Part shown: piece by piece, positions 1,986 through 64,000 of the stretch
Layout: every line of letters starts with the position of its first letter
Position numbering within the stretch: position 1 is the stretch's first letter
Assembly: GCA_010909165.1 (NCBI GenBank)
Contig: MU008187.1
Coordinates: forward strand, 748,247 to 812,246
Reading direction: 5' to 3'
Length of the DNA: 64,000 bases
Source: Anthoceros angustus
Taxonomy: Eukaryota; Plantae; Anthocerotophyta
The notes under the pieces: generated by a model
Told to the model about the DNA's origin: nothing
Databases searched by the model: none
What the model saw: only the letters and a program-made list of their open reading frames with translations
Position numbers and translations under genes: made by a program

Positions 1986-4900
1986 ATGGGTACAGTATGG
2001 CAACCGGACCCATTGTGGACACAACAAATTGGTGTTCGAGGAGCTCCCGCTCACCTAATCTTAGGGAGACCCCTGGCAAAGACTGCCCCCAGGTGCTGCA
2101 GTGTGAGGAGCCCAGCACTTCCACTTCCGGGAAAGTGTTTGGGTAGGGACGGATTTTCCAGCGATGGTCGTTGCCAGCAGCAGGAGCACTTGTGGGAACA
2201 ATTTTTTCTGGACCCAACCATGTGGTGGGACAACAGACGAGATAAGAAGAGCTCCCGTTCTCCTGACTTCCGGCGTAAGGGGTCCGGCGAGGTGCTGTGG
2301 TTAAATAAGTTCAAGCCAGCTTGGGTTGATGAGCAGCTTATTTCCTTGGATATGCAGATGGGTCATGGTGCCTCTCCTTCCAGTCAGCTCTCCGGATAAG
2401 CCTGAACCTGGCAGGCGTGCAGGATCGGAAATGGGCGTCGTAACGGCTGGAACCGTGAGCATGTTATGTCAGCAGGGGAAGCTTTCTGAGGCCGTTGGAG
2501 CCCTGGAATCTCTGGCGCAGACAGACTCTGCTGTTTCTCGGTCTCTGTTGTACACTGTGCTGAAACTGTGTACAGCTAAGAAGGATTTGGTTGTGGGGCG
2601 ACGAGTTCATGATCTCACTGTCAAACTTGGGTACGAGTCGAATGCATACCTGGGGAATCATATCTTGCGCATGTATGCATGTGGAGGTAGGCTAGAGGAG
2701 GCAATGGATGTGTTCACCAGGGTAGGCAAACCAGATGCCTTCATGTGGTTTTCCATAATCTCTGCATATGCTAAGCATGGGAAACCCAAGGAGGCCATAC
2801 ATCTGTACTATGACATGCGAAGGTCAGGAGTGAAGGCGGATGCTCACGTCTTTGTAGCTGCCCTTCAAGCTTGTGCATTTGCCGCCGACTTGGAATCTGG
2901 CAGAAAAGTGCACTATGATGTGTTGCACAGTGGCATTCCTACCAACTTGTTTGTTGGCAACTGCCTGGTGGACATGTATGCAAAATGTGGCGAACTGAAA
3001 GATGCACGCCAGGTTTTTGACAGCATGGCCACAAAGGATGTGGTGACATGGAATGCCCTGATTGCTGGGTATGCACAGCAAGGACTCGGCCAAGAGGCGC
3101 TTGTTGTGTATGGACAAATGGAGCAGGAGGGCCTTATTTTGGCTAACCATGTTACTTTTGCTTGCCTTCTGAAGGCCTGTGCAAGCACTGGTGCGTTACA
3201 GAAGGGCAAGCAGCTGCACTCGCAGATTGTCGAAGAGGACTGCTGGATAACGTAGTGGTGGGCAACTGCCTGGTGGACATGTATGCAAAATGTGGTGAAC
3301 TGGAAGATGCACGCCAGGTTTTTGACAGCATGGCCACAAGGATGTGGTGACATGGAATGCCCTGATTGCTGGGTATGCACAGCAAGGACTCGGCCAAGAG
3401 GCGCTTGTTGTGTATGGACAAATGGAGCAGGAGGGCCTGATTTTGGCTAACCATGTTACTTTTGCTTGCCTTCTGAAGGCCTGTGCAAGCACTGGTGCCT
3501 TACAGAAGGGCAGGCAGCTGCACTCACAGATTGTCGAAGAGGACTGCTGGATGACGTAGTGGTGGGCACCTGCCTGGTGGACATGTATGCAAAATGTGGT
3601 GAACTGGAAGATGCACGCCAGGTTTTTGACAGCATGGCCACAAAGGATGTGGTGACATGGAATGCCCTGATTGCTGGGTATGCACAGCAAGGACTCGGCC
3701 AAGAGGCGCTTGTTGTGTATGGACAAATGGAGCAGGAGGCCTGATTTTGGCTGACCATGTTACTTTTGCTTGCCTTCTGAAGGCCTGTGCAAGCACTGGT
3801 GCCTTACAGAAGGGCAGGCAGCTGCACTCACAGATTGTGGAAAGAGGACTGCTGGATAACGTAATGTTGGCAACTGCCTGGTGGACATGTATGCAAAATG
3901 TGGTGAACTGGAAGATGCACGCCAGGTTTTTGACAGCTTGGCCACAAGGATGTGGTGACATGGAATGCCCTGATAGCTGGGTATGCTCAGCAAGGACTCG
4001 GCCAAGAGGCGCTTGTGTGTATGGACAAATGGAGCAGGAGGGCCTGATTTTGGCTGACCATGTTACTTTTGCCTTCTGAAGGCCTGTGCAAGCACTGGTG
4101 CCTTACAGAAGGCAGGCAGCTGCACTCACAGATTGTGGAAAGAGGACTGCTGGATGACGTAGTGTGGGCAACTGCCTGGTGGACATGTATGCAAAATGTG
4201 AACTGGAAGATGCACGCCAGGTTTTTGACAGCTTGGCCACAAAGGATGTGGTGACATGGAATGCCCTGATATCTGGGTATGGTGCTTGTGATGAAGGTCA
4301 CAAGGCACTAGCTTGTTTTGAGGAGATGTTAGTTGCCGGTATTCAGCCTGATGATGCTACTTTTACTTGCCTTTGTAGCTGCCCTTCAAGCTTGTGCATT
4401 TGCCGACTTGGAATCTGGCAGAAAAGTGCACTGTGATGTGCACAGTGGCATTCCTACCAACTTGTTTGTTGGCAACTGCCTGGTGGACATGTATGCAAAA
4501 TGTGGCGAACTGAAAGATGCACGCCAGGTTTTTGACAGCATGGCCACAAAGGATGTGGTGACATGGAATGCCCTGATTGCTGGGTATGCAGCAAGGCTTG
4601 GACATGAGGCGCTTGTTGTGTATGGACAAATGGAGCAGGAGGGCCTGCTTTTGGCTAACCATGTTACTTTTGCTTGCCTTCTGAAGGCCTGTGCAAGCAC
4701 TGGTGCCTTACAGAAGGGCAGGCAGCTGCACTCAGATTGTCGAAAGAGGACTGCTGGATGACGTAGTGGGCACCAGCCTGGTGAACATGTACGCGAAATG
4801 TGGCGAAATGGAAGATGCACGCCAGGTTTTTGAAAGCTTGGCCGAAAAGGATGTGGTGACATGGACGACCCTGATTGCTGGGTATGCACAGCAGGGCCTA

Positions 4901-6664: not shown

Positions 6665-8470
6665 GAAGGAAAAGGAAGATGCTTTGTGGCAACTGCCTGG
6701 TGGACATGTATGCATGTGGAGGTAGGCTGCAGGAGGCCATACAACTGTACCATGAGATGCGTAGGTCAGGAGTCAACCCTGGCAAACCAGATGCCTTCAT
6801 GTGGTCTTCCAGTTCTGACAGTTCAACCAGGAGCTCCCGTTCGCCTGACTTCCGGCGTAAGGGTCCGGCGAGGTCCTGTGGTTAAACAGCATGGCATCAA
6901 ACCTACTATTGAGCATTACACCTGCATGATTGATCTTCTTGGGCGTGCAGGATCGGAAATGGGCGTCGTAACGGCTGGAACCGTGAGCATTACACCTGCA
7001 TGATTGATCTTCTTGGGCGTGCAGGCCATTTAGATGAGGCAGAGAAGATGCTTTGTGGCAACTGCCTGGTGGACATGTATGCAAAATGTGGTGAACTGGA
7101 AGATGCTTTGTGGGCATGCTGAGAAGCTAGCTCTGGCGTTTGGTCTGTTGGTAAACTCATCTTCCGACAGCGGTCCCTGAACGATGGCCACTGTATGGCA
7201 ACCGGACCCGTTGTGGACCCAACAAATTGGTGTGTACAGGGATTCTACCAGGAGCTCCGCTCACCTCATCAGGAGTCAACCCTGGCAAACAACCAAGCCT
7301 CCAGGTGCAGCAGTGTAAGGCCCAGCACTTCCACTTCCGAAAATGTGGTGGGGACGGTTTTCCAGCGATGGTCGTCGCCAGGAGCAGGAGCACTTGTGGC
7401 AACAATTTTTCTGGACCCTACCATGTGGTGGGACAACAGACGAGATAAGAAGAGCTCCCGTTCGCCTGACTTCCGGCGTAAGGGTCCGGCGAGGTCCTGT
7501 GGTTAAACAACATGTTTAAGCCAGCTTGGGTTGATGAGCAGCTCGTTTCCTTGGATATGCAGATGGGTCATGGTGCCTCTCCTTCCAAGTCCAGCTCTCC
7601 GGATAAGCCTGAACCTGGGAGGCGTGCAGGATCGGAAATGGGCGTCGTAACGGCTGGAACCGTGAGCATGTTATGTCAGCAGGGAAGCTTTCTGAGGCCG
7701 TTGGAGCCCTGGAATCTCTGGCGCAGACAGACTCTGCTATTTCTGGTGGGCAACTGCCTGGTGGACATGTATGCAAAATGTGGTGAACTGGAAGATGCAC
7801 GCCAGGTTTTTGACAGCATGGCATCAAACCTACTATTGAGCATTACACCTGCATGATTGATCTTCTTGGGCGTGCAGGATCGGAAATGGGCGTCGTAACG
7901 GCTGAACGATGGCCACTGTATGGCAACCGGACCCGTTGTGGACCCAACAAATTGGTGTGTGTCCAGGGATTCTACGAGGAGCTCCGCTCACCTCATCAGG
8001 AGTCAACCCTGGCAAACCAAGCCTCCAGGTGCAGCAGTGTAAGGAGCCCAGCACTTCCACTTCCGAGATGTGTGGTGGGGACGGTTTTCCAGCGATGGTC
8101 GTCGCCAGGAGCAGGAGCACTTGTGGCAACAATTTTTCTGGACCCTACCATGTGGTGGGACAACAGACGAGATAAGAAGAGCTCCCGTTCGCCTGACTTC
8201 CGGCGTAAGGGTCCGGCGAGGTCCTGTGGTTAAACAACATGTTTAAGCCAGCTTGGGTTGATGAGCAGCTCGTTTCCTTGGATATGCAGATGGGTCATGG
8301 TGCCTCTCCTTCCAAGTCCAGCTCTCCGGATAAGCCTGAACCTGGGAGGCGTGCAGGATCGGAAATGGGCGTCGTAACGGCTGGAACCGTGAGCATGTTA
8401 TGTCAGCAGGGAAGCTTTCTGAGGCCGTTGGAGCCCTGGAATCTCTGGCGCAGACAGACTCTGCTATTTC
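6665..8470 (+). other. Mosaic of PPR-gene fragments including two copies of the transit-peptide/PDF N-terminus
   Basis: Short pieces of DYW, S, P, S2 and N-terminal sequence joined at 7-10 nt shared words; N-terminal copies near 7180-7745 and 7909-8470. Confidence 0.75.
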
Positions 8471-8602: not shown

Positions 8603-11600
8603 ATGGCCACTGTATGGCAACCGGACCCGTTGTGGACCCAGCAAATTGGTGTGTGTCCAGGGATTCTACGAGGAGCTCCCGCTCAACTCACGTCAGGGAG
8701 TCACCTGGCAAACAACCAAGCCTCCAGGTGCAACAGTGGGAGGAGCCCAGCACTTCCACTTCCGAGATTTTGTGTGGGTGCGGACGGGTTTTCCAACAAT
8801 GGCCGTCGGCAGGAGCAGGAGCACTTGTGGCAACAATTTTTTCTGGACCCGACCATGTGGTGGGACAACAGACAGGATAAGAAGAGCTCCCGTTCGCCTG
8901 ACTTCCGGCGCAAGGGGTCCGGCGAGGTCCTGTGGTTAAACAGCATGTTCAAGCCAGCTTGGGTTGATTTGCAGCTCTTTTCCTTGGATATGCAGATGGG
9001 TCATGGTGCCTCTCCTTCCAAGTCAGCTCTCCGGATAAGCCTGAACCTGGGAGGCGTGCAGGATCGGAATGGGCGTCGTAACGGCTGGAACCGTGAGCAT
9101 GTTATGTCAGCAGGGAAAGCTTTCCGAGGCCGTTGGAGCCCTGGAATCTCTGGCGCAGACAGACTCTGCTATTTCTCAGTCTCTGTTTTCCACTGTGCTA
9201 AAACTGTGTACAGCTAAGAAGGATCTGGTTGTGGGCCGACGAGTTCATGATCTCAGTGTCAAACTTGGATACGAGTCGAATGCGTACCTGGGGAACCATA
9301 TGTTGCGCATGTACGCATGTGGAGGTAGGCTGCAGGAGGCCATGGATGTGTTCACCAGGGTAGGCAAACCAGATGTCTTCATGTGGTCTTCCATAATCTC
9401 ACATGCTAAGCATGGGAAACCTAAGGAGGCCATACAACTGTACCATGAGATGCGTAGGTCAGGAGTGAAGGCGGATGCTCACGTCTTTGTAGCTGCCCTT
9501 CAAGCTTGTGCATTGGCCGACTTGGAATCTGGCAGAAAAGTGCACTGTGATGTGGTGCACAGTGGCATTCCTACTAACTTGTTTGTTGGCAACTGCCTGG
9601 TGGACATGTATGCAAAATGTGGTGAACTGGAAGATGCACGCCAGGTTTTTGACAGCATGGCCACAAAGGATGTGGTGACATGGAATGCCCTGATTGCTGG
9701 GTATGCAGCAAGGACTCGGCCAAGAGGCGCTTGTTGTGTATGGACAAATGGAGGAGGAGGCGGGCCTCATTTTGGCTAACCATGTTACTTTTGCTTGCCT
9801 TCTGAAGGCCTGTGCAAGCACTGGTGCCTTACAGAAGGGCAGGCAGCTGCACTCACAGATTGTTGAAAGAGGACTGCTGGATAACGTAGTGGTGGGCACT
9901 GCCTGGTGGATATGTATGCAAAATGTGGTCAACTGGAAGACGCACGCCTGGTTTTTGACAGCATGAACACAAAGGATGTGGTGACATGGACCATGCTGAT
10001 TTCTGGGTATTCCCACCAAGGGCTTGGACATGAGGCACTTGCTGTGTATGGACAAATGGAGGAGGCAGGGCTGATCTTAGCTGACCATGTTACTTTTTCT
10101 TGCCTTCTGAAGGCCTGTGCAAGCACTGGTGACTTACAGGAGGGCAGGCAGCTGCACTTGCAGATTGTTGAAAGAGGACTGCTGGATAACGTAGTGATGG
10201 GCACCTGCCTGGTGGACATGTATGCAAAATGTGGTGAGCTGGGTGATGCACGCCAGGTTTTTGACGGCTTGGCCACAAAGGATGTGGTGACATGGACGGC
10301 CCTGATAGCTGGGTATGCAGCAAGGACTCGGCCAAGAGGCGCTTGTTGTATGGACAAATGGAGGAGGGCCTCATTTTGGCTGACCATGTTACTTTTGCTT
10401 GCCTTCTGAAGGCCTGTGCAAGCACTGGTGCCTTACAGAAGGGCAGGCAGCTGCACTCACAGATTGTCGAAAGAGGACTGCTGGATAACGCAGTGGTGGG
10501 CACTGCCTGGTGGACATGTATGCAAAATGTGGTGAACTGGAGATGCCAGGTTTTTGACAGCAGCCACAAAGGATGTGGTGACATGGAATGCCCTGATATC
10601 TGGGTATGGTGCTTGTGATGAAGGTCACAAGGCACTAGCTTGTTTTGAGGAGATGTTAGTTGCCGGTATTCAGCCTGATGATGCTACTTTACTTGCCTTT
10701 TAGCATGCAGTCATGAGGACTGGTCCACGAGGGTCGCAAGCACTTTGATTCCATGGCTGAACAGCATGGCATCAAACCTACTATTGAGCATTACAATTGC
10801 ATGATTGATCTTCTTGGGCGTGCAGGCCATTTAGATGAGGCAGAGAAGATGCTATTATCATGTGAGGCCAAAGTAATGTTGTGGGCCGACGAGTTCATGA
10901 TCTCAGTGTCAAACTTGGATACGAGTCGAATGCGTACCTGGGGAACCATATGTTGCGCATGTACGCATGTGGAGGTAGGCTCCAGGAGGCCATGGATGTG
11001 TTCACCAGGTTAGGCAATCCAGATGTTTTCACGTGGTCTTCCATCATATCTGCACATGCGAAACACGGGAAACCTAAGGAGGCCGTACAACTGTACCATG
11101 AGATGCGTAGGTCGGGAGTGAAGGCGGATGCTCACGTATTCGTAGCTGCCCTTCAAGCTTGTGCATTGGCCGCCGACTTGGAATCTGGCAGAAAAGTGCA
11201 CTGTGATGTGGTGCAAAGTTGCATTCCGCCTGACTTGTTTGTTGGCGCCAGCCTGGTGGACATGTATGCAAAATGTGGCGAGCTGAAAGATGCACACAAG
11301 GTTTTTGACAGCTTGCCCACAAAGAATGTGGTGACATGGAATGCCCTGATATCTGGGTATGCAAAATGTGGTGAACTGAAAGATGCACGCCAGGTTTTTG
11401 ACAGCATGGCCACCAAGAACGTGGTGACATGGAATGCCCTGATAGCTGGGTATGCCAAGCAAGGGCTCGGACGTGAGGCGCTTGTTCTGTATGGACAAAT
11501 GGAGGAGGATGGCCTCATTTTGGCGGACCATGTCACTTTTGCTTGCCTTCTGAAGGCGTGTGCAAGCACTGGTGCCTTACAGAAGGGCAGACAGCTGCAC

Positions 11601-14611: not shown

Positions 14612-15260
14612 ATGGCCACAGTATGGCAACCGGACCCGTTGTGGACCCAACAAATTGGTGTGAGTACAGGGATTCTACGAGGAGCTCCCGCTCACCTCAT
14701 CGTAGGGAGTCAACCCCTGGCAAACAAAGTTTGCAGGTGCAGCAGCGTAAGGAGCCCAGCACTTACACGTCCGAGAAAATTTGTGGGCGGGCACGGGATT
14801 TCCAACGATGGTCGTCGCCAGGAGCAGGAACACTTGTGGCAACAATTTTTTCTGGACCCAACCATGTGGTGGGACAACAGACGAGATAAGAAGAGCTCCC
14901 GTTCGCCTGACTTCCGGCGTAAGGGGTCCGGCGAGGTCCTGTGGTTAAACAACATGTTTAAGCCAGCTTGGGTTGATGAGCAGCTCGTTTCCTTGGATAT
15001 GCAGATGGGTCATGGTGCTCTCCTTCCAAGTCAGCTCTCCGGATAAGCCTGAACCTGGCAGGCGTGCAGGATCGGAAATGGGCGTCGTAACGGCTGGAAC
15101 CGTGAGCATGTTATGTCAGCAGGGAAGCTTTCTGAGGCCGTTGGAGCCCTGGAATCTCTGGCGCAGACAGACTCTGCTATTCTCAGTCTCTGTTTTACAC
15201 TGTGCTAAAACTGTGTACAGCTAAGAAGGATTTGGTTGTGGGGCGACGAGTTCATGATCT
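14612..15260 (+). other. Isolated N-terminal fragment (transit peptide, PDF motif, first PPR motifs) within mosaic sequence
   Basis: ORF 14612..15046 [11 protein letters not shown]...[19 protein letters not shown]; jumps to DYW-end sequence at about 15260. Confidence 0.7.
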
Positions 15261-15882: not shown

Positions 15883-18800
15883 ATGGCCACAGTATGTCAA
15901 CCGGACCCGTTGTGGAGCCAACAAATTGGTGTGTACCCAGGGACTCTACGAAGAGCTCCCGCTCCGCTCACTGTAGGGACTCAACCCCTGGCAAAAGAAG
16001 CCTTCAAGTGCAGCAGTGTGAGGAGCCCAGCACTCTCACATCCGAGAAAATGTGTGGGTGGGGACGGGATTTCGAACGGTGGTCGTCGCCAGGAGCAAGA
16101 GCAACTGTGGCAACAATTTTTTCTGGATCCCACCATGTGGTGGGACAACAGACGGGACAAGAAGAGCTCCCGTTCGCCTGACTTTCGGCGTAAGGGGTCC
16201 GGCGAGGTCCTGTGGCTGAACAGCGTGTTCAAGCCAGCTTGGGTTGATTTGCAGCTCGTGTCCTTGGATATACAGGTGGGTTATGGTGGCTCTCCTTCCA
16301 AGTCTAGCTGTCCGGATAAGCCTGAAGCTGGGACGGGTGCACGCGCGGAAACGGGCGTCGTAACGGTTGGCACCGTGAGCATGTTATGTCAGCAGGGGAA
16401 CCTTTCTGAGGCCGTTGGAGCCTTGGAATCTCTGGCGCAGGTAGATTCTGCTATATCTCAGTCTCTATTTTGCACTGTGCTAAAACTGTGTACAGCTAAG
16501 GGGGATTTGGTTGTGGGGCGACGAGTTCATGATCTCTGTCAAACTTGGGTACGAGTCGAATGCATACATGGGGAACCATATCTTGCGCATGTATGCATGT
16601 GGAGGTAGGCTACAGGAGGCCATGGATGTGTTCACCAGGGTGGGCAAACCAGATGCCTTCATGTGGTCCTCCATAATCTCCGCATACGCTAAGCATGGGA
16701 AACCTAAGGAGGCCATACAACTGTACCATGAGATGCGTAGGTCAGGAGTGAAGGCGGATGCTCACGTCTTTGTAGCTGCCCTTCAGGCTTGTGCGTTTGC
16801 CTCCGACTTGGAATCTGGCAGAAAAGTGCACTGTGATGTGTTGCACAGTGGCATTCCTACTAACTTGTTTGTTGGCTGCCTGGTGGACATGTATGCAAAA
16901 TGTGGTGAACTGAAAGATGCACGCCAGGTTTTGACAGCATGGCCACAAAGGATGTGGTGACATGGAATGCCCTGATTGCTGGGTATGCAGCAAGGACTCG
17001 CCAAGAGGCGCTTGTTGTATGGACAAATGGAGCAGGAGGGCCTCATTTTGGCTAACCATGTTACTTTTGCTTGCCTTCTGAAGGCCTGTGCAAGCACTGG
17101 TGCCTTACAGAAGGGCAGGCAGCTGCACTCACAGATTGTTGAAGAGGACTGCTGGATGACATACTGGTGGGCAACTGCCTGGTGGACATGTATGCAAAAT
17201 GTGGTGAACTGGAAGATGCACGCCAGGTTTTGACAGCATGGCCACAAAGGATGTGGTGACATGGAATGCCCTGATTGCTGGGTATGCACAGCAAGGACTC
17301 GGCCAAGAGGCGCTTGTTCTGTATGGACAAATGGAGGAGGGCCTCATTTTGGCTGACCATGTTACTTTTGCTTGCCTTCTGAAGGCCTGTGCAAGCACTG
17401 GTGCCTTACAGAAGGGCAGGCAGCTGCACTCAGATTGTGGAAGAGGACTGCTGGATAACGTAGTGGTGGGCAACTGCCTGGTGGACATGTATGCAAAATG
17501 TGGTGAACTGGAAGATGCACGCCAGGTTTTGACAGCATGAACACAAAGGATGTGGTGACATGGAATGCCCTGATAGCTGGGTATGCACAGCAAGGACTCG
17601 GCCAAGAGGCGCTTGTTGTGTATGGACAAATGGAGCAGGAGGGCCTCATTTTGGCTAACCATGTTACTTTTTGCCTTCTGAAGGCCTGTGCAAGTACTGG
17701 TGCCTTACAGAAGGGCAGGCAGCTGCACTCACTGATTGTCGAAAGAGGACTGCTGGATAACGTACTGGTGGGCAACGGCCTGGTGGACATGTATGCTAAA
17801 TGTGGTGAACTGGAAGAAGCACACCAGGTTTTTGACAGGATGAACACAAAGGATGTGGTTACATGGACTGCCCTGATAGCCGGATATGCACAGCAAGGAC
17901 TCGCCAAGAGGCGCTTGTATGGACAAATGGAGCAGGAGGGCCTCATTTTGGCTGACCATGTTACTTTTGCTTGCCTTCTGAAGGCCTGTGCAAGCACTGG
18001 TGCCTTACAGAAGGGCAGCTGCACTCACAGATTGTCGAAAGAGGACTGCTGGATAACGTAGTGGTGGGCAACTGCCTGGTGGACATGTATGCAAAATGTG
18101 GTGAACTGGAAGATGCACGCCAGGTTTTGACAGCATGGCCACAAAGGATGTGGTGACATGGAATGCCCTGATATCTGGGTATGGTACTTGTGATGAAGGT
18201 CACAAGGCACTAGCTTGTTTTGAGGAGATGTTAGTTGCCGGTATTCAGCCTGATGATGCTACTTTACTTGCCTTCTAGTAGCATGCAGTCATGAGGACTG
18301 GTCCACGAGGGTCGCAAGCACTTTGATTCCATGGCTGAACAGCATGGCATCAAACCTACTATTGAGCATTACACCTGCATGATTGATCTTCTTGGGCGTG
18401 CAGGCCATTTAGATGAGGCAGAGAAGATGCTATTATCATGTGAGGCCAAAGTAATGTTGTGGGGTTGACGTCTTTGTTGAATGCCTGCAAAAGTCACGGG
18501 GATATAGAGAGGGCGATGTGGTGTTTTGAAAGCATTGTTAGGCTGGACCCTCAGGCGTCGCATGTGCTCATGGCCAATGCCTACGCAGATGCAGGTATGT
18601 GGAGCGATGTAGACAGGATTGAAACACAGAGAATGGTAGCAGGAGCTAACAAGAAACCTGCAGTGGCGACCATTGAGGTGAAGAAGCAGGTACATACGTT
18701 TTCGGTGGGAGAAAGAAGAGACGATATTGCGCTAAAGGTAGAGAGCACGAATGCACGTCTGAAGCAGGAAGGAGGTCACGTACCTCACACAAAGTTGGTG

Positions 18801-22025: not shown

Positions 22026-22105
22026 CTTCTTGTATCTATCATCCCACCACTGATTGGGATTGGAGAAAAACAGGCGCCAACGCTGCTCAACTCCGTCCCC
22101 TGACT
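22026..22105 (-). other. Orphan exon encoding the first half of an OSB-type PDF motif
   Basis: TTGCAG acceptor and GTGAGT donor bracket ESGDGVEQRWRLFFSNPNQWWDDRYKK. Confidence 0.55.
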
Positions 22106-26728: not shown

Positions 26729-26962
26729 ATGAAGGAAGATGCGCTTTGTGGGCATGCTGAGAAGCTAGCTTTAGCGTTTGGTCTGTTGAACACTCCGAGT
26801 GGGACACCTCTGGTGGTAACGAAGAATCTACGCATGTGCAGTGACTGCCATAGTTCCACGGAGATCATGTCACGGCTTGAACATAGAGACATTGTTGTAA
26901 GGGATGGGTATCGTGTTCATCGATTCGCAGCTGGTTTTTGTAGTTGTAAGGGTCGACAGTGA
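26729..26962 (+). pseudogene. Solo C-terminal DYW:KP fragment (ends CSCKGRQ)
   Basis: 77-aa [19 protein letters not shown]...CSDCH...CSCKGRQ with no PPR array or KP box upstream. Confidence 0.8.
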
Positions 26963-27653: not shown

Positions 27654-28047
27654 TGCAGTGGCGACCATTGAGGTGAAGAAGCAGGTACATACATTTCTGG
27701 TGGGAGAAAGAAGAGATGATATTGCGCTTAAGGTAGAGCACGAATGCACGTCTGAAGCAGGAAGGAGGCCACGTACCTCACACAAAGTTGGTGTTGAAGC
27801 CACTGTCTGAGAAGGAAAAGGAAGATGCGCTTTGTGGGCATGCTGAGAAGCTAGCTCTGGCGTTTGGTCTCTTGAACACTCCGAGTGGGACACCTCTGGT
27901 GGTAACGAAGAATCTACGCATGTGCAGTGACTGCCACAGTTCCACGGAGATCATGTCAAGGCTTGAACAGAGAGACATTGTTGTAAGGATGGGTACCGTG
28001 TGCATCGATTCGCAGCTGGTTTTTGTAGTTGTAAGGGTCGACCGTGA
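27654..28047 (+). pseudogene. DYW:KP (GRP) C-terminal fragment at the start of a ~1.6-kb segmental duplication
   Basis: Matches 18659-19055; similarity continues through the 3' flank to about 29239. Confidence 0.8.
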
Positions 28048-30825: not shown

Positions 30826-31300
30826 TCGTGGTCGAGATGTCGGGGGTTAGTCTAACCCTCGAGGCAGGTTATGGAGATTGCCTTTGAAGCAGGCAGCAAA
30901 GTCGGCAGCGTGGTGCTTGCCTTGGCTGCCTGGGCAGTGGAGTGCAGTGCAGTGCAGTGCAGAGGGCAGGAGCGGAGCGGAGCTGCTGCCACCAGAGGGT
31001 TGCTGCTCTGAGCGAGCGGAGCGTGGGGCGCTGACGCGGATCCGGCAGAAGCGAGCTCGGCGCGGGCAGGGACGCCATCGGACCATGCCGATGTGGAGGG
31101 ATGGAATCTGAGGAATCGCGGGATCGCGTGGGCGTGATCTCGGCGCTGCGGGCTCGCTGCTGCGGGCTTTGGGATCTGGGGGCCTCCTGGCGCATTGGAG
31201 TGCTGTGCCGGGGGGGTGATCCGTGTGGTGGAGTGGTCGGGTGAGGGGATCGGGAGGGAGTTGGAGGGAGGGAGGTAGCGGGAGCTCTGCGGCGGGCGCC

Positions 31301-36869: not shown

Positions 36870-38345
36870 GTTGCCAGCCACCAGCTCTATCGTTCCATTC
36901 GATGTTTCAAGGCCCCAAGGTTGTCCAGACCTTCTGTTGCTACAATAACTTCACCTCTCACTCACGTCGGATCAGAAGGCTCTGCGCATACGGACTCCTG
37001 GCTGCAGTCTTGTCGAGCTCGGCCAAATACTGTTTCGTGTCGAGGCAAGGCAGCTCCATTCTCGCTTCTGAGCCTCCGCCCTGGATCATCAAGGTTCAAA
37101 CGAATTATCGGATAAGCACAACAGCATTGTTTCAACCATGATCCTGCTGGAAAGAGAGTACGACAGAGCACGGCCACTGACAACCCGATCCAACCAGCAG
37201 GGACCTAAGCAAGCAATCCAGGAAGAAAGTTCCACAAACTGCTGCATTGCAAGTTCCTACATTGAAGAGAGAGTGGAATTAAATCGAGGTTACAGAACCG
37301 GGGACGGATCATAAAGTTTCTCGAGTCCTGAGCTTGAGATATTAGCACTGGGAAGAATGTTGGACACGCAACAGCTGCGACATAACGTGACATAGCGAAG
37401 CCCGAAATAGTACCAGCTATTGAAGAAGAGGGGGTGGAAACCGAGCGTTGGGAAACTGCGTGCTGGCGTGTTGGAGAAACCGAGTCGGGAGCAGGGCATG
37501 ATCCTCGACATGCAGATACTGGGGCCGCGCCGGGAGGGCAGCGAAGCATACGGCCGCTGGAAGAGGAGGAGGAGCTGAAGACAGCCACAGGAGATGCGCG
37601 CGACGCGGGAAGGAAGGAGGAGAGGAAAGAGAGACGCAGTAGCCAGTGAACTCGGCACAGAACTCGGGGGCAACGAGAGTGTGATGTTATGGAGCACAAT
37701 GATGGCAGCAAGCTGGCACGGAAACTAGGGGAGAGAACCTTCTTTCGCAGCACCTGTGTCATTAAATAAAAGTTGCTCGTCCGGGGCCTAGGCTTTAGCT
37801 GCCTGCCTGAACGGACCCCGAGTCGGTCAATGCTTGACTCCTTCGCACCTGTCCTCCGTGACCGTGCCCTACGCGCACGCTTCCAAGTCAAGAAAGCCTG
37901 CCTACCGCCAACCGCTCCTTCCGGGATCCTCCATCGGCCACAGCCGGTTCCCGGTTCCCACTGTTCCGCAAACGCGCAGCAGCTGCCGGAGCGGCTGCCG
38001 CTTCCCGTGCCGCGGCCTGCCTTGAATCGCTCCGGATCGGATTGTATCGAGGCGAGGCTGTGGAGACGAATTTGTGTGCTGTCCAGATCCAGGATCCGTC
38101 TCATGTGTTGTGGATGCTGGTGGAAAGCGGATTGTTTGATTTCCGTGTGAGCTTTCTGTTTTCGTTTGCTGTGCTGTGCTTGGAAGGAGCCAGGGTTTAT
38201 ACCTGCGGCAGGCGCAGGCGCAGGCAAGCTTGTTTGCGGGATCCAGCAGCTGGAAAGACCTGCACCGGTCTTGATGCATGTGCAGGAGCGTTGGATCGAG
38301 CTGTTTGAAGTCGAGTTTGGATCTTGAAAAGGAGAGGTGGAAGCG

Positions 38346-39440
38346 ATGGCGCTCCTGCTGGTGAACTGCAGTCAGTGTAGGACTCCCTTGCAGCTTCCGC
38401 CAGGTGCGACTGTTATTCGGTGTGCTCTCTGCCAGGCCGTGACCTCAGTGACCACGCCGAGAGAAGGAGGCGTGTCACACCCCGGGTATCCGGCTCCTTA
38501 CCAGCCGGCAGCTTCCAGCGGGGTGCAGCTCTACGGGCAGCCAGCTCCCACTCAGTATGCTCCTGCGCCTCCGCAGGCCCATGGCTCCAAGAGAGCCGTC
38601 ATCGTCGGCATCTCGTATCGCTACACACGTCATGAGCTCAAGGGATGCATCAACGATGCCATGTGTATGCGGTACATGCTCATCAACAGGTTCAAGTTTC
38701 CGGAGTCTTCTATTCTCGTGCTCACGGAGGACGAGGTTGATCCACTGAGGAAACCTATCCGGCATAACATTCTGATGGCGTTGCACTGGCTCGTGCTTGC
38801 AAACAAGGCTGGAGATTCTTTGGTTTTCCACTTCTCAGGTCACGGCTCGCAGACACCGAACTACCGAGGGGAAGAGGCCGATGGTTATGACGAGACAATC
38901 TGTCCACAAGACTTCACTACGGCAGGGATGATTGTGGACGATGAGATAAACGAGAGAATTGTCAGACCCTTGGTTCCTGGCGCTAGACTGCATGCCATAA
39001 TTGACGCCTGTCACAGTGGGACGGTGCTGGACTTGCCATATCTCTGTAGGTTTAATCGAGTGGGACAGTTTCAGTGGGAGGATCATCGGCCTCGTTCAGG
39101 CAAATGGACAGGCACCAGCGGTGGACAGGTCTACTCTTTCAGTGGCTGTGACGACAACCAGACTTCTGCTGATACTTCATCTCTTTCCCAGATCACTTCT
39201 ACAGGAGCTATGACCTTTTGTTTCATACAAGCTGTGGAACGAGGAGCGGCAACTTACGGAGCCGTGCTCAATGCCATGCGGTATGCAATCCGGGAGGCGG
39301 ATTCAAAGCTGAGCACTGGTGGTCCTGTCAGCTCCCTGTTGGAAATGCTTGTCACTGGTGGGAGCTACAACCGGATGACTCAAGAGCCCCAACTCACATC
39401 CTCTGACATGTTCGACATCAACTCTCACTTTTATCTGTGA
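38346..39440 (+). CDS. MC1: Type I metacaspase with LSD1-like zinc finger, intronless
   Basis: CSQCRTPLQLPPGATVIRCALC, Pro/Gln-rich prodomain, LKGCINDA, and catalytic FHFSGHG and DACHSG. Confidence 0.95.
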   Translation: MALLLVNCSQCRTPLQLPPGATVIRCALCQAVTSVTTPREGGVSHPGYPAPYQPAASSGVQLYGQPAPTQYAPAPPQAHGSKRAVIVGISYRYTRHELKGCINDAMCMRYMLINRFKFPESSILVLTEDEVDPLRKPIRHNILMALHWLVLANKAGDSLVFHFSGHGSQTPNYRGEEADGYDETICPQDFTTAGMIVDDEINERIVRPLVPGARLHAIIDACHSGTVLDLPYLCRFNRVGQFQWEDHRPRSGKWTGTSGGQVYSFSGCDDNQTSADTSSLSQITSTGAMTFCFIQAVERGAATYGAVLNAMRYAIREADSKLSTGGPVSSLLEMLVTGGSYNRMTQEPQLTSSDMFDINSHFYL

Positions 39441-52255: not shown

Positions 52256-54646
52256 CTAGACATGCATGAATCTCGATGGTAGACAGCTCAGACCATCATC
52301 GGGTATCTCTGAAGGTGAAGAACGCGGCACTTTGCTCACTCTAAAACGCTGCTCCACAATTGATCCACTTACCGGATATGTTCTATCCTTCACCAAGAAA
52401 CTATGCACCAGCCCTTCCATGTCTGCCCACCAGCTCTGACCTGGCTGCTTCCATGCCCCACGTGCTACCCTCCTCGCCTGCATCTCATATGCCTGTTCCC
52501 ACATCTGGGCACCGGCATATATGTTTGACATCAGAACATATGCCGCAGCATCTTTATTATCCAGCTTCACTGCTTCATCAAACGCATGGCGTCCCACCTC
52601 CACGTTGTTCCACTTTTGACAAGCACCCAATAGAGTGCCCCAAAGCGCAGCATCAGGAGGTACCAACATTGTCCTTGCCAAAGCTAGTGCCTCATCCAGT
52701 CGGCCTGCACGCCCCAGGAGATCCAACATGCATGTGTAGTGTTCTGCCGTGGGAGTGATGGAATAGTGTTTGCTCATAGCCTCGAAGTACTCTTGTCCCT
52801 TGTCCAGTAGACCTTTGTGACTGCATACTAGTAGTACACTAAGGAAGGTGGTGGCAACTGGCTTAAAACCATCCTCTTCCAATTTCTGAACCAAGTTGAA
52901 GACCCGATCACTGTCTCCTTGATAGGTGTAACCAGCAATCAGTGCATTCCAGGTGACAATATCTCTCTCAGACAACGCATCAAACACCTGCTGCGCATCA
53001 GCCATGCTCCCCGATCTGGCATACATGTTTATCAAAGTGCTAGCCAGAAACACATCAGCTTGAAGCCCTTGCTCTTTGATCTGTACATGAAGCTGCCTTC
53101 CCAGATGCAGGGCTGCCATATTTGCACATGCCTGCAGAAGACATAGAAATGTCACAGTATTAGGTGCAACAGTGCCTTCTCGTTGCATCGCACTGTAGAG
53201 ATGTAGGGCTTCCTGGCCCATCCCCTGCTGGGAATAACCAGCTATCATGGCATTCCACGTGATAACATCTTTTTGAACAAGCCTGTCAAACACTCTCTGG
53301 GCATCTTCCAAGCTGCCGCATTTTGTATACATGTTTACCAGACTATTGGCAACGAACAGATCAGCTTGATGGCCCCGTTCTCTTATTTGTGCATGAAGAT
53401 GCCTCCCATTCTCCAAAGCCGAGGTGCCCACACTTGTGCATGCCTGCAGAAGAGACACAAATGTCACACTGTCAGGTGCAGCCATGCCTTCCTCTTGCAT
53501 TGCACTGTAAAGACGAAGGGCTTCCTGGCCCATGCCCTGCTGGGCGTACCCGGCTATCATGGCATTCCAAGTCACGACATCTTTCTGACCAAGTCCGTCA
53601 AACACTCGTCGGGCGTCATCCAAGCTGCTACACTTTGCATACATGTCCACCAAGCAATTCCAAATAACCAAATGAGGCTCAAGGATAGTGGCCAACACGT
53701 CAGCATGCACCTGCTGCCCAGTTTTCAAGTCTTCTCCCCTCGCACAAGCCTGCAGGGCTGCCACAAACACATGGCCATCTGGCTTCACACCCGACCTGCG
53801 CATCCTACGATACAGTTCTAAGGCCTGCTTGTGCTGTCCGCGTTCAACGTGCGCAGAGATTATGGCAGACCATGTGAAGGCATCTGGTTTGGCAACCATA
53901 TCGAAGACATCCATAGTTTCCTGCAGCCTGGCATGAGAACCATACATCCGCAGGATGTGATTGCACAAGAACGTGTCCGACTCATACCCCTGCTTCCTGC
54001 TGAGAACGTGAACACGCTGAACCAGAGGCAGATCCTTGTTAGCCACACACTCTTTGAGGACAGCATAAAACAGAGATTTCGAAACATGACATCCTGTGCC
54101 CACCAGAACTCCCAGGGCCTCCACGGCCTTATCGAGCTGCCCCTGCTGACATAATTCGCTCACGGTTTCAGGCGTCACGCCTCCTTCGTATCCTGCAGGC
54201 CTGGGAGGGCAGTTGGATGTTGTGGCACAACGCCCCATGCGCAGATCCAGATCTGCCAGTTGCGCATCTACCCAATGTGGCTTGTAGAAGTTGTTTAACC
54301 AGAGGACCTCCTGGCACTTCCTATGCCGGAAGTCCGGCGAACGGGAGCTCTTCTTCTGTTGCCTGCTATCCCACCAAACTGCGGGGTCGAGAAAGAATTG
54401 CCGCCACAAGCGCTCCTGGCGACAACTCTCGCTGGACGATCCATCTCCAGCCAGACATCCCCTTGGACAGGCTGGCCTCCTTCTGAAAACGATGCATTTC
54501 GCGGCTTTGCTGTTTGCCAAGGTTCGGTCCCTGGAATTAAGAAAAGCGGCAGAGCTGGAACTCCCACAACCTTGCTGGCCCAACAAACACGGGCCCAACA
54601 AAAACGAGTCCTTCCGTGACTGGATTGTGCTGCCCCAGGCAACCAT
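52256..54646 (-). CDS. Intact PLS-class PPR protein with N-terminal PDF-like motif, E1/E2 and truncated DYW:WW-type extension (E+-like)
   Basis: 796-aa ORF: [39 protein letters not shown] triplets, P2-L2-S2, LWGTLLGAC, AYVLMSNIY, KQPGQSWW...VHSF; no HxE or CxxC afterwards. Confidence 0.92.
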   Translation of the reverse strand: MVAWGSTIQSRKDSFLLGPCLLGQQGCGSSSSAAFLNSRDRTLANSKAAKCIVFRRRPACPRGCLAGDGSSSESCRQERLWRQFFLDPAVWWDSRQQKKSSRSPDFRHRKCQEVLWLNNFYKPHWVDAQLADLDLRMGRCATTSNCPPRPAGYEGGVTPETVSELCQQGQLDKAVEALGVLVGTGCHVSKSLFYAVLKECVANKDLPLVQRVHVLSRKQGYESDTFLCNHILRMYGSHARLQETMDVFDMVAKPDAFTWSAIISAHVERGQHKQALELYRRMRRSGVKPDGHVFVAALQACARGEDLKTGQQVHADVLATILEPHLVIWNCLVDMYAKCSSLDDARRVFDGLGQKDVVTWNAMIAGYAQQGMGQEALRLYSAMQEEGMAAPDSVTFVSLLQACTSVGTSALENGRHLHAQIRERGHQADLFVANSLVNMYTKCGSLEDAQRVFDRLVQKDVITWNAMIAGYSQQGMGQEALHLYSAMQREGTVAPNTVTFLCLLQACANMAALHLGRQLHVQIKEQGLQADVFLASTLINMYARSGSMADAQQVFDALSERDIVTWNALIAGYTYQGDSDRVFNLVQKLEEDGFKPVATTFLSVLLVCSHKGLLDKGQEYFEAMSKHYSITPTAEHYTCMLDLLGRAGRLDEALALARTMLVPPDAALWGTLLGACQKWNNVEVGRHAFDEAVKLDNKDAAAYVLMSNIYAGAQMWEQAYEMQARRVARGAWKQPGQSWWADMEGLVHSFLVKDRTYPVSGSIVEQRFRVSKVPRSSPSEIPDDGLSCLPSRFMHV

Positions 54647-55658: not shown

Positions 55659-58600
55659 ATGACCGCAGTATTGCAACCGGACCCGTTGTGGACCCAACAA
55701 ATTGGTTTGTGTACAGGGATTCTACGAGAAGCTCCCGCTCACCTCACGTCAGGGAGTAAATCCCGGGAAAACAACCAAGCCTCCAGGTGCAGCAGTGTAA
55801 GGAGCCCAGCACTTCCACTTCCGAAAAAATGTGTGGGCGGGGACGGATTTTCCACCTCCGGTCGTCACCGGGAGCAGGAGCACTTGTGGCAACAATTTTT
55901 TCTGGACCCTGCCATGTGGTGGGATAACAGGCGAGATAAAAAGAGCTCCCGTTCGCCTGACTTCCGGCGTAAGGGGTCTGGCGAGGTCCTGTGGTTAAAC
56001 AGCATGCTCAAGCCAGCTTGGGTTGATGAGCAGCTCATTTCTTTGGATGTGCAGATGAGTTATGGTGCCTCTCCTTCCAAGTCGAGCTCTCTGGATAAGC
56101 CTGAACCTGGCAGGCATGCAGGATCGGAAATGGGCGTCGTAACAGCTATCACCCTGAGCACGTTATGTGAGCAGGGGAAGCTTTCTGAGGTGGTTGGAGC
56201 ACTGGAATCTCTGGCGCAGACAGATTCTGCTATTTCTCTGTCCCTGTTTTGCACCGTGCTAAAACTGTGTGCCGCTAAGAAGGATCTGGTTGTGGGGCGA
56301 CGAGTTCATGACCTCATTGTCAAACTTGGGTACGAGTCCGACGCATACTTGGGGAGCCATATCTTGCGCATGTATTCTTGTGGAGGTAGGCTAGAGGAGG
56401 CCATGGATGTGTTCACCATGCTGGGCAAACCAAATGTCTTCATGTGGTTTTCCATCATTTCTGCATATGCTAAGCATGGGAAACCTTATGAGGCCATACA
56501 GCTGTACCATGAGATGCGTAGGTCAGGAGTGAAGGCGGATGCTCACGTCTTTGTAGCTGCCCTTCAAGCTTGTGCATTTGCTGCCGACTTGGAATCTGGC
56601 CGAAAAGTGCACTGTGATGTGTTGCAGAGTGGCATTCCTCCTGACTTGTTTGTTGGCAACTCCCTGGTCAACATGTATGCAAAATGTGGCGAACTGATGC
56701 ACGCCAGGTTTTGACAGCTACAAAGGATGTGGTGACATGGAATGCCCTGATTGCTGGGTATGCACAGCAAGGCTCAGAGGCGCTTGTTATGGACAAATGG
56801 AGCAGGAGGGCCTCATTTTGGCTGACCATGTTACTTTTGCTTGCCTTCTGAAGGCTTGTGCGAGCACTGGTGCCATACAGAAGGGCCGGCAGCTGCACTC
56901 GGAGATTGTGGAAGAGGACTGCTGGATATAGTGGGCAACTGCCTGGTGGACATGTATGCAAAATGTGGTGAACTGGAAGATGCACGCCAGGTTTTGACAG
57001 CTTGGCCACAAAGGATGTGGTGACATGGAATGCCCTGATTGCTGGGTATGCACAGCAAGGACTCGGCCAAGAGGCGCTTGTTCTGTATGGACAAATGGAG
57101 GAGGGCCTGGCTGACCATGTTGTTACTTTTGCTTGCCTTCTGAAGGCCTGTGCAAGCACTGGTGCCTTACAGAAGGGCAGGCAGCTGCACTCACAGATTG
57201 TGGAAGAGGACTGCTGGATAACATAGTGTTGGGCAACTGCCTGGTGGACATGTATGCAAAATGTGGTGAACTGGAAGATGCACGCCAGGTTTTTGACAGC
57301 TTGGCCACAAAGGATGTGGTGACATGGAATGCCCTGATGCTGCTGCAGCAAGGCTCACAAGAGGCGCTTGTTCTGTATGGACAAATGGAGGAGGGCCTGT
57401 GGCTGAATGATGTTACTTTTTGCCTTCTGAAGGCCTGTGCAAGCACTGGTGCCTTACAGGGCAGGCAGCTGCACTCACAGATTGTGGAAGAGGACTGCTG
57501 GATAACGTAGTGTTGGGCACCTGGTGGACATGTATGCAAAATGTGGTGAACTGGAGATGCACAGGTTTTGACAGCTTGGACAAAGGATGTGGTGACATGG
57601 AATGCCCTGATAGCTGGGTATGCAAGGACTCGGCCAAGAGGCGCTTCTGTATGGACAAATGGAGCAAGAGGGCCTCATTTTGGCTGACCATGTTACTTGC
57701 CTTCTGAAGGCCTGTGCAAGCACTGGTGCCTTACAGAAGGGCAGGCAGCTGCACTCAGATTGTGGAAAAGACTGCTGGATAACAGTGTTGGGCAACTGCC
57801 TGGTGGACATGTATGCAAAATGTGGTGAACTGGAAGATGCACGCCAGGTTTTTGACAGCTTGGCCACAAAGAATGTGGTGACATGGAATGCACTGTTAGC
57901 TGGGTATGCACACCAAGGGCTCGGCCAGGAGGCGCTTGTTCTGTATGGACAAATGGAGCAAGATGGCCTGATTTTGGCTAACGAGATTACTTTCGCTTGC
58001 CTTCTGAAGGCTTGTGCAAGCACTGGTGCCTTACAGAAGGGCAGGCAGCTGCACTCGCAAATTGTTGAAAGAGGACTGCTGGCTAACGTAGTGTTGGGGA
58101 CCTGCCTAGTGGAGATGTACGCCAAATGTGGTGAACTGGAAGATGCGCGCCAGGTTTTTGAAACCTTGGCCACAAAGAATGTGGTGACATGGACGGCGCT
58201 GATAGATGGGTATGGTACTTGTGATGAAGGTCACAAAGCAGTAGCTTGTTTTGAAGAGATGTTGGTCGCTGGCATTCAGCCTGATGATACTACGTTTACT
58301 TGCCTTTTAGCAGCATGCAGTCATGAGGGGCTGGTTCACGAGGGTCGCAAACACTTTGATTCCATGGCTGAACAGCATGGCATCAAACCTACTATTCAGC
58401 ATTACGCTTGCATGGTTGATCTTCTTGCGCGTGCAGGCCATTTAGATGAGGCCGAGAACATGCTATTATCGTGTGAGGACCCAAACAATGTTGTGGGGTT
58501 AACATCGTTGCTGAATGCCTGCAAAAGTCACGGGGATATAGATAGGGCAACCCGTTGTTTTTCAAGTCTCGTGAAAGTGGAGCCTCAGAGTGCGTCGGCT

Positions 58601-59095
58601 TATGTGCTGATGGCCAATGCCTATGCGGATGCAGGAATGTGGACTGATGTAGAGAGGATTGAAAGAGAGAGAATGGTAGCAGGAGCTAACAAGAAACCTG
58701 CAGTGGCGACCATCGAGGTGAAGAAGGAGGTACATACATTTGTTGTGGGAGAAAACAGAGATGATATTGCGCTCAAGGTGGAGAGCATGAGTGCACGTCT
58801 GAAGCAGGAAGGAGGCCATGTGCCCCACACAAAGTTGGTGTTGAAGCCACTGGGTGAGAAGGAAAAGGAAGGTGTGCTCTGCGGGCATGCTGAGAAGCTA
58901 GCCCTGGCGTTTGGTCTCTTGGACACTCCGAGTGGCACACCTCTGGTGGTAACGAAGAATCTACGCATGTGTAGTGACTGCCACAGTTCGACCGAGATCA
59001 TGTCAAGGGTTGAAAAGAGAGACATTGTTGTAAGGGATGGGTACCGTGTGCATCGATTCGCAGCTGGTTGTTGCACTTGTAAGGGTAGACCGTGA
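55659..59095 (+). CDS. PDF-PLS-PPR-E-DYW:KP (GRP-type) protein, putative U-to-C editing factor; frameshifts confined to the central repeat array
   Basis: ORF 55659..56714 covers transit peptide, PDF and PPRs. ORF 57620..59095 covers PPRs, E1/E2, [26 protein letters not shown] and CTCKGRP*. Confidence 0.9.
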
Positions 59096-62133: not shown

Positions 62134-63557
62134 TCACGGTCGACCCTTACAACTGCAAAAACCAGCTGCGAATCGATGCACACGGTAACCATCCCTTACA
62201 ACAATGTCTCTCCCTTCAAGCCTTGACATGATCTCCGTGAAACTGTGGCAGTCACTGCACATGCGTAGATTCTTTGTTACTACCAGAGGTGTCCCACTCG
62301 GAGTGTTCAAGAGACCAAACGCCAGAGCTAGCTTCTCAGCATGCCCACACAGCTTCTTTTTCCTTCTCAGCCAGAGGCTTCAACACCAATTTTGTGTGAG
62401 GTACGTGGCCTCCTTCCTGCTTCACAAGTGCATTCGTGCTCTCCACCTTAAGCACAATATCATCTCTTCTTTCTCCCACCGCAAATGAATGTACCTGCTT
62501 CTTCACCTCAATGGTCGCCACTGCAGCTTTCTTGTTAACTCCTGCTACCATTCTCTGTGTTTCAATCGTCTCTCGTGGACCAGTCCCGCATGACTACATG
62601 CTACTAAAAGGCAAGTAAAAGTAGAATCATTCAGCTGAATACCGGAAGCTAACATCTCCTCAAAACAAGCGAGTGCCTTGAGGCCTTCATCACAAGTCCC
62701 ATACCCAGATATCAGGGCGGTCCATGTCACCACATTCTTTGTATTCATGCTGTCAAAAACTTGGCGTGCAGCGTCCAGTTCACCGCATTTTGCATACATG
62801 TCCACCAGGCAGGTGCCCACCACTACGTCATCCAGCAGTCCTCTTTCAACAATCTGCCAGTGTAGCTGCCTGCCCTTCTGTAAGGCACCAGTGCTGCCAG
62901 AGGCCTTCAGAAGGCAACCAAAAGTAACATGGTCAGCCAAGATGAGGCCCGCCTCCTTCATTTGTCCTTACACAACCAGCGCCTCTTGGCCGAGTCCTTG
63001 CTGTGCATACCCAGCAATCAGGGCGGTCCATGTCGTCACATCCTTCGTGGCCAAGCTCTCAAAAATCTGGCGAGCATCTTCCAGTTCACCACATTTTGCA
63101 TACATGTCCACCAGGCAGTTGCCCAACACTACGTCATCCAGCGGTCCTCTTTCGACAATCTGTGAGTGCAGCTGCCTGCCCTTCTGTAATGCACCAGTGC
63201 TCGCACAGGCCTTCAGAAGGCAAACAACCATAACATGGTTAGCCAAAATCAGGCGCTCCTGCTCCAATGTGCATACACAACAAGCGCTTCATTCCCAAGC
63301 CCTCGCTGTGCATGTATACCCAGCAATCAGGGCATTCCATGTCACCACATCCTTTGTGGCCAATCGTTTGAAAACCTGGCGTGCATCTTCCAGTTCCCCA
63401 CATTTTGCATACATGTTCACCAGGCAGTTGCCCAACAAGACGTCATCCAGCAGTCCTCATTTGGCAGTCTGTGAGTGCCGCTGCCTGCCCATCTGTAAGG
63501 CACCAGTGCCTGCACAGCCCTTCAGGAGGCAAGCAAAAGTAATATCGTTAGCCAGAA
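62134..63557 (-). pseudogene. Decayed PLS-PPR-DYW:KP (GRP) copy in inverted orientation
   Basis: PPR triplets 62575-63557 with an in-frame TAA replacing Tyr at about 62968, S2/E1/E2 deleted at about 62570, KAAVATIEV, and a GRP* end at 62134-62136. Confidence 0.85.
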
Positions 63558-64000
63558 GCTGTGGGTGAGCGATTGTGGTGCCCCGGACGGAACAGCGAGA
63601 CGGAGTTGCAGGCTAGTGAAGATTTGTCGGGAGGTTAACGGGATGCAGCGAGGAGGACAGGGGGTGGAGAAAGGCAAACAAGGAGGTGGTGGTAGACCTG
63701 TCGGAATCGGGAAGGGAGTGATGTGAGATTGACGGCAGGGCACCATGAACGACCGTCTCGCATAGCGGCCGATGCCTATCATCTCTGCCATGTTCTCCGA
63801 TGCGCATGTGGCATGATATCTGCCAAAGTTCTCCACCTGGGAGCATTGTGACTGGTGAACCAGTCCGTTTGGTACTCCCGCAATCGCTTGCTGCCGCTGA
63901 GGACTCTGGAGTTTCATATGCCAAGCCGGCCGCCGATTCCATGGTGGAATTGGCAGCTTGGTACCTCTACTCTGTTCTGCTGTTTTGCGTTGGCTGAGCG

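What the first reader, a model, noticed from the sequence alone, without database searches (positions are those of the whole stretch)
55659..59095. RNA-editing PPR deaminases fused to an OSB-type PDF ssDNA-binding module
Seen: every PPR gene with a visible N-terminus (starts 1986, ~7180, 7909, 8603, 14612, 15883, 55659 and the minus-strand gene at 54646) has [23 protein letters not shown]...EVLWL....KP.WVD.QL between a ~70-aa Ser/Arg-rich leader and the first PPR. It is in one uninterrupted frame with PPRs in ORFs 55659..56714, 15883..16608 and 52256..54646, so the fusion is not a frameshift artefact. Established: this matches from memory the PDF motif of plant organellar ssDNA-binding OSB proteins (LW..FF.NP..WWDNR..K.NP..PDFKHK..GEALWL), which binds ssDNA; canonical PLS-DYW editing factors have no such domain. 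Inference: a transit peptide-PDF-PPR-DYW architecture could tether editors to nucleoid ssDNA or transcription bubbles for co-transcriptional editing, serve as a built-in RNA-binding or unfolding helper in place of the MORF/RIP cofactors that bryophytes lack, or bring the deaminase near ssDNA. I do not know of a description of this fusion but cannot exclude one.
Basis: partly seen in the sequence, partly recalled or inferred. Interest (0 to 1): 0.92.

Follow-up and report, generated by a model that had tools for sequence, protein, structure and literature searches.

The report
OSB-derived domain on PPR editors
A cluster of plant genes for organelle RNA-editing proteins, probably from a hornwort, carries a small folded domain at the front. 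[quoted passage not shown]

Summary
The module is real. Residues 74-130 of the 55659 gene are an OSB-type PDF domain: an OSB-only profile gives 77 bits against at most 12 in 2000 shuffles, identity to an OSB1-like protein is 53%, and the fold matches (TM 0.90). It is under purifying selection (dN/dS 0.14; leader 0.70) and sits on a loose linker before about 23 PPR motifs and a hornwort GRP-type DYW:KP (U-to-C) domain.

Moss and Selaginella fusion genes keep the same intron inside the PDF as liverwort and oak OSB genes. So the domain came from an OSB gene, and the intronless copies here probably passed through a spliced PDF-PPR mRNA.

Corrections: this gene is frameshifted in its repeats (probably assembly errors). 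The only intact fusion here (52256-54646, minus) has no DYW domain. The fusion is not specific to U-to-C editors; it occurs in moss, lycophytes and ferns, and none was found in seed plants. Synthetic GRP editors work without it.

Best guess: an accessory grip on single-stranded nucleic acid (0.45). DNA editing is unlikely. The scan found this fusion many times elsewhere in this genome.

The parts
55659..55877 (+). 73-aa leader, Ser/Thr/Arg/Pro-rich, predicted disordered; probable organellar transit peptide (inferred, no targeting predictor run)
   Evidence: pLDDT <50 for residues 1-64; dN/dS 0.70
55869..56054 (+). OSB-type PDF domain (core residues 74-130), intronless
56067..56144 (+). loosely structured linker, residues ~137-162
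   Evidence: pLDDT 51-66
56145..56237 (+). helical cap before the first PPR, shared by the fusion proteins
56238..58486 (+). PLS-class PPR array, about 23 motifs, including five near-identical 306-nt triplets and the P2-L2-S2 triplet
56690..57790 (+). stretch with about 37 deletions (93 nt) and 2 insertions that break the frame; probably unpolished long-read errors in near-identical repeats
   Evidence: inconclusive
58487..58690 (+). E1 and E2 motifs
58691..59095 (+). DYW:KP domain, GRP type: KPAVA box 58691, HAE 58886, Lys88 equivalent 58955, CxxC 58970, GRP end 59084
52256..54646 (-). intact 796-aa gene: leader, PDF (54421-54239), PLS array, E1, E2, PG-type box, no DYW domain
2175..2357 (+). 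PDF domain of the paralogue starting at 1986 (frame shifts just after it; gene runs to a GRP end near 6661)
7388..7562 (+). frameshifted PDF in a truncated copy starting ~7184
8115..8289 (+). frameshifted PDF in a truncated copy starting 7909, 98% identical to the 7184 copy
8807..8995 (+). PDF domain of the paralogue starting at 8603
14816..15004 (+). PDF domain of the truncated paralogue starting at 14612
16087..16275 (+). PDF domain of the paralogue starting at 15883 (gene runs to a GRP end at 19052)
22026..22105 (-). orphan 80-nt exon encoding the first half of a PDF, with a phase-1 acceptor and phase-0 donor at the positions conserved in OSB genes; lies in scrambled sequence

Best explanation
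These are nuclear genes for PLS-class PPR RNA-editing factors of plant organelles, probably from a hornwort. Shown here: each begins with a disordered leader, then a separately folded PDF domain that came from an OSB gene, a loose linker, a PPR array, and either a GRP-type DYW:KP domain or an E-type end without DYW. Established for the families: the PPR array reads the RNA with its N-terminus at the 5' end, GRP domains convert U to C, and in OSB proteins the PDF binds single-stranded DNA. Inferred: after import and leader cleavage the PDF becomes the mature N-terminus and works as a sequence-independent grip on single-stranded nucleic acid, most likely the transcript upstream of the PPR site. 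It raises dwell time, helps scanning or keeps the RNA open, and is not needed for catalysis. Inferred history: the PDF exons were recruited from an OSB gene early in land plants, lost their introns by retroposition in hornwort and some fern and moss copies, spread with the PPR expansion, and were lost or never gained in seed plants.
For: Homology and fold. Every column that is near-invariant in OSB PDFs (W10, P17, W20, D22, R24, K27, P33, D34, F35, L44, W45, P50, W52) is kept in 52 fused PDFs, with a net charge at least as positive (+2.1 against +1.2). dN/dS 0.14, p 1.7e-5, as constrained as the PPRs (0.23) and the DYW:KP domain (0.21). Separate domain on a loose linker. Same phase-0 intron in OSB genes and in Sphagnum and Selaginella fusions. 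Found with GRP, canonical DYW and DYW-less ends, which points to a role common to all PPR editors. PDF and PPR occur in single Pteridium transcript contigs. PDF is sufficient for ssDNA binding in OSB1 (PMC6963530).
Against: No binding assay exists for a fused PDF. OSB1 and OSB2 prefer ssDNA over RNA (PMC4166229), which favours a DNA-side role. The binding residues of the PDF are not mapped in any paper I could read, so the conserved columns may be structural. Editors lacking it work in E. coli. Expression and integrity of this exact gene are not shown. Monophyly of fused PDFs was neither recovered nor rejected.
Confidence: 0.45

Rival explanations
1. Nucleoid tether: the PDF keeps its OSB preference for ssDNA and holds the editor at organellar nucleoids or transcription bubbles, so nascent transcripts are edited early.
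For: OSB1 and OSB2 prefer ssDNA to RNA; the OSB consensus is fully kept; many PPR proteins are nucleoid-associated (PMC10226603).
Against: OSB2 binds as a tetramer, whereas most fusions carry one PDF. Many editor paralogues coating ssDNA could interfere with replication (inference). No localisation data.
Confidence: 0.25
2. Protein-side role: the PDF is a folding or solubility cap, an oligomerisation module, or a docking site for partners such as OSB proteins or a separate DYW protein.
For: Compact, tryptophan-rich, well-folded domain at the mature N-terminus; also present on a protein without DYW that needs a partner; distribution seen is complementary to MORF genes, which occur only in seed plants.
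Against: Basic residues are conserved as in OSB. MORF2 and MORF9 did not improve synthetic U-to-C editors, and those editors worked without the PDF.
Confidence: 0.17
3. Passenger: the PDF came along when a PPR gene borrowed the 5' exons and targeting peptide of a PDF-bearing gene, and it is kept only because an unfolded version would harm import or stability.
For: It lies directly behind the leader, at a conserved phase-1 exon boundary; it is dispensable for editing in bacteria.
Against: Strong purifying selection; retention in moss, hornwort-type, lycophyte and fern genes, with duplication to two or three copies in some. In OSB genes the PDF is C-terminal, so it is not next to the OSB transit peptide.
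Confidence: 0.1
4. DNA editor: the PDF brings the catalytic domain to organellar ssDNA and changes DNA bases.
For: An ssDNA-binding module and a deaminase-fold enzyme share one chain; designer PPRs can bind ssDNA (PMC5992170, title and abstract).
Against: GRP domains convert U to C on RNA; one carrier has no catalytic domain; the PDF is about 23 repeats from the active site.
Confidence: 0.03

Closest known systems
OSB proteins (Arabidopsis OSB1-4): transit peptide, OB-fold, one to five PDF motifs
   Same: The PDF domain: 53% identity to a Drosera OSB1-like protein, same predicted fold, same intron position in intron-bearing fusions.
   Different: No OB-fold here; the PDF is N-terminal and joined to a PPR array; usually one copy. 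A 2026 OSB survey kept only proteins with both domains and never mentions PPRs (PMC13393729).
Hornwort GRP-type PPR-DYW:KP proteins (U-to-C editors; synthetic KP2 and KP3)
   Same: PLS array, E1, E2, KPAVA box, HAE, Lys88 equivalent, CxxC, Glu for the conserved Lys, GRP end.
   Different: The natural genes carry a PDF domain before the array; the synthetic proteins tested so far do not.
PPR fusions with RRM, MORF or RanBP2 zinc-finger domains (PMC13386178)
   Same: An accessory nucleic-acid-binding domain joined to a PPR editing factor.
   Different: Those are a handful per lineage outside angiosperms. The PDF fusion is family-wide in this cluster and in Diphasiastrum, has no Pfam model, and is absent from that survey's text.

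Membership tests
PDF motif of OSB proteins | about 50-aa motif with the Pro-Asp-Phe signature and conserved tryptophans | tested here: met
PDF motif of OSB proteins | same fold as the OSB domain | tested here: met
   model against model, TM 0.90, rmsd 1.4 A over 67 residues; no solved structure found
PDF motif of OSB proteins | binds ssDNA | not testable with these tools
   needs a binding assay
OSB protein family | OB-fold (SSB-like) domain before the PDF | tested here: not met
   no PF00436 in the window proteins; none of the 12 PPR fusions among 150 hits has it
PLS-class PPR proteins | P-L-S triplets, P2-L2-S2, E1 and E2 | tested here: met
DYW:KP, GRP type | KP box, HAE, active-site lysine, CxxC, GRP terminus | tested here: met
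   57620..59095; not met by 52256..54646, which has no DYW domain
DYW:KP, GRP type | intact, expressed reading frame at this locus | tested here: inconclusive
   frameshifts confined to the repeats; no run of the same strain, only contigs of paralogues
DYW:KP, GRP type | U-to-C activity on an organellar target | not testable with these tools
   shown only for synthetic KP2 and KP3 (PMC9478123)
organelle-targeted editing factors | cleavable transit peptide ending before the PDF | tested here: inconclusive
   leader is disordered and fast-evolving; no targeting predictor available

The most novel reading that the evidence does not exclude
The PDF is a built-in cofactor of a large share of RNA-editing factors in seed-free plants, recruited once from OSB near the origin of land-plant editing. 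It couples editors to nucleoid DNA or nascent RNA, stands in for the MORF cofactors that seed plants later acquired, and is needed for natural U-to-C editors to work efficiently.
Probability: 0.2. Interest if true: 0.85.

Novelty: new variant of a known kind. Interest (0 to 1): 0.6.

Why it matters
PLS editing factors are described as transit peptide, PPR array and E/DYW end, and expression constructs usually cut off everything before the first PPR. If many editors of hornworts, mosses, lycophytes and ferns carry a selected nucleic-acid-binding domain there, the standard model and the standard assays have left out a part. It links organellar DNA maintenance (OSB) to RNA editing in evolution, offers a simple test of how seed-free plants edit without MORF proteins, and could improve engineered U-to-C editors. 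The domain has no Pfam model, which may be why domain surveys missed it.

Tried and rejected
Chance match: rejected. Frameshift or assembly chimera as the source of the fusion: rejected; it is in one frame in two ORFs here and in intact proteins from other species. Specific to U-to-C editors: rejected. Pfam, PHROGs, PDB sequence and PDB fold searches for the module gave nothing significant. The phage tblastn hits (E 3-6) and the Atlas feature hits to phage gp49 (score 0.83 or less) are not evidence. Two word-based searches with window proteins found one and no relatives, because hornwort proteins are scarce in that database. The read layout could not settle error against pseudogene: no run came from the same strain and paralogues swamped it. 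The 57-column PDF tree cannot tell one origin from several. Zaegel 2006 and Gerke 2020 were not held and I did not look up Gutmann 2020, so a mention in any of the three cannot be excluded. Target sites were not predicted, because no organelle genome was on hand.

Full report
Observation. The window holds a cluster of PPR genes (1986-19055, 52256-54646 minus, 55659-59095, 62137 onward minus). In 55659..56714 it occupies residues 74-130 and shares a frame with Pfam PPRs; the same holds for the intact 796-aa gene 52256..54646. In 15883..16608 the frame shifts halfway through the first PPR, and the copies at 7184 and 7909 are frameshifted within the motif.

State of the gene. 55659..59095 is not one ORF. 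Measured against the last intact 306-nt unit, the four preceding units carry 37 deletions (93 nt) and 2 insertions; 11 of 14 single-base deletions fall in homopolymer runs; there are no in-register stop codons; and the 2.3 kb of flanks have no frameshift (the count depends on one reference unit and on gap placement). Single-copy neighbours (903-aa adaptin, 570-aa GMP synthase, the 796-aa PPR) are unbroken. This pattern suggests unpolished long-read errors in near-identical repeats (inference). Contigs from four public runs carry the missing letters at several breaks, but they come from paralogues or other strains, so they do not decide it. Expression of this copy is not shown.

What the C-terminus is. 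The plus-strand genes end in a DYW:KP domain of the GRP type: KPAVA box, HAE, the lysine four residues before the Met that precedes CxxC (Lys88 by the papers' numbering, my mapping), Glu for the conserved Lys, and a GRP end. GRP is a hornwort subgroup, and synthetic GRP proteins convert U to C in E. coli and human cells without any PDF (PMC9478123; PMC11845758). The source is therefore probably a hornwort (inference). The intact minus-strand gene ends in E1, E2 and a PG-type box with no DYW.

What the module is. A profile of seven copies found 718 proteins. Of the top 150, 78 have an SSB-type OB-fold, 12 have PPRs, none has both, and several are named OSB1, OSB2 or OSB3. In the reverse test, a profile from 180 PDFs of OB-fold proteins alone scores the window copies 66-80 bits against at most 11.6 in 2000 shuffles. 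Identity to a Drosera OSB1-like protein is 30 of 57. The AlphaFold model is confident (pLDDT 93.7). It matches an OSB cluster at TM 0.90 and three PPR clusters of 127, 57 and 63 members at 0.83-0.91. No solved structure matches. In a 345-residue model the leader is disordered, the PDF folds, residues 137-162 are loose, and the helical array follows.

Selection. In independent pairs of paralogues dN/dS is 0.14 for the PDF (p 1.7e-5 against neutrality), 0.70 for the leader, 0.23 for the first PPRs and 0.21 for the DYW:KP domain; PDF against leader, Fisher p 0.024 (all pairs). All near-invariant OSB columns are kept in 52 fused PDFs, and the net charge is at least as positive.

Distribution. PDF-PPR fusions occur in Sphagnum (canonical DYW end), Diphasiastrum (many; some DYW, some with two or three PDFs), Selaginella, Adiantum, Ceratopteris and Pteridium, the last in transcript contigs. 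An intact 753-aa PDF-PPR-GRP protein lies on another contig. In a search that returned 97 proteins, all 21 PPR fusions were from Diphasiastrum and all named seed-plant hits were OSBs. This suggests, but does not prove, absence from seed plants; the query was a Diphasiastrum protein and the search is insensitive.

Origin. OSB genes of a liverwort (L004) and oak (L005) have a phase-1 intron before the PDF and a phase-0 intron inside it, after the lysine of WWDxRxxK. The Sphagnum fusion (L003) has both and the Selaginella fusion (L006) has the inner one; the window's fusions and L001 have none, and an Adiantum fusion gene is exactly as long as its coding sequence. An orphan exon at 22105-22026 (minus) has the same two splice sites. 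I infer that the domain was recruited from an OSB gene at the DNA level and that intronless copies went through a spliced PDF-PPR mRNA, in line with retroposition as a driver of PPR expansion in these lineages (PMC13386178). The shared intron does not tell one recruitment from several; the PDF tree does not group all fused copies, yet a single clade is not rejected (p-AU 0.37).

Mechanism. From established knowledge, the PPR array binds RNA N-to-C along 5'-to-3', so the PDF sits at the 5' end, about 23 nucleotides or more from the edited base. In OSB1 the PDF is sufficient for ssDNA binding, and OSBs prefer ssDNA to dsDNA or RNA. The domain goes with U-to-C, C-to-U and non-catalytic ends alike, and editors work without it in bacteria. 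I therefore favour a general accessory grip on single-stranded nucleic acid, most likely the transcript (0.45), over a nucleoid tether (0.25), a protein-side role (0.17), a passenger (0.10) or DNA editing (0.03). None is tested.

Literature. Nine full-text searches found no description of the fusion. The 2026 surveys of editing factors and of OSB genes do not mention it in their text. Zaegel 2006 and Gerke 2020 were not held, and Gutmann 2020 was not looked up.

Earlier scan notes. The scan had reported the same fusion many times elsewhere in this genome, with a similar verdict, and once on an overlapping stretch. I saw those notes early and tested their main claims myself. A word search for the intron argument found no note.

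Operators' notes. 

Verdict. Real, homologous, selected, old and apparently undescribed: a new variant of a known kind, with function open. Interest 0.6.

Noticed in passing
window 28995-30707 (-), 31223-33934 (+), 35631-36881 (-), 38337-39440 (+): Single long ORFs for GMP synthase (570 aa), an adaptin large subunit (903 aa), a RING-finger protein and an LSD1-type metacaspase; several of these genes have introns in other plants (my knowledge), so intron loss may be wider here.
   Followed up: no
window 20240-22400: Scrambled stretch: telomere-like TTTAGGG repeats at 20734-21026, 71-nt and 18-nt repeats, a 40-nt PPR fragment and the orphan PDF exon; may be a misassembly.
   Followed up: partly
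window 19001-20250 and 27993-29238: 1.25-kb duplication at 95% identity that includes the end of a GRP gene and the 3' end of the GMP synthase gene.
   Followed up: no
proteins P0008, P0011 (P0003 similar, source unnamed): Dinoflagellate proteins (Effrenium, Cladocopium) made largely of tandem PDF domains, although a review states that PDF motifs are confined to green plants.
   Followed up: partly
model of window 55860-56060: Two clusters of uncharacterised tailed-phage proteins match the PDF fold at TM 0.70 and 0.66: a lead to a phage origin of the domain, not supported by sequence searches.
   Followed up: partly
window 52256-54646 (-) against 55659-59095 (+) and P0001: The PDFs and first repeats of the three proteins are about equally related (54-68%), while the C-terminal parts split GRP from PG-type (60% against 37-40%), suggesting that N- and C-terminal modules have different histories.
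   Followed up: partly
L007 3001-5051: Intronless, broken moss-type PDF-PPR-DYW gene on a metagenome contig, beside the intron-bearing Sphagnum gene L003: both states occur in this subfamily.
   Followed up: no
protein P0053: Coptis gene model joining three PDFs to a kinesin motor; may be a merged annotation.
   Followed up: no
window 62137-63600 (-) and 26732-28044 (+): Further GRP-type gene whose N-terminus lies beyond the window, and isolated DYW:KP fragments.
   Followed up: no
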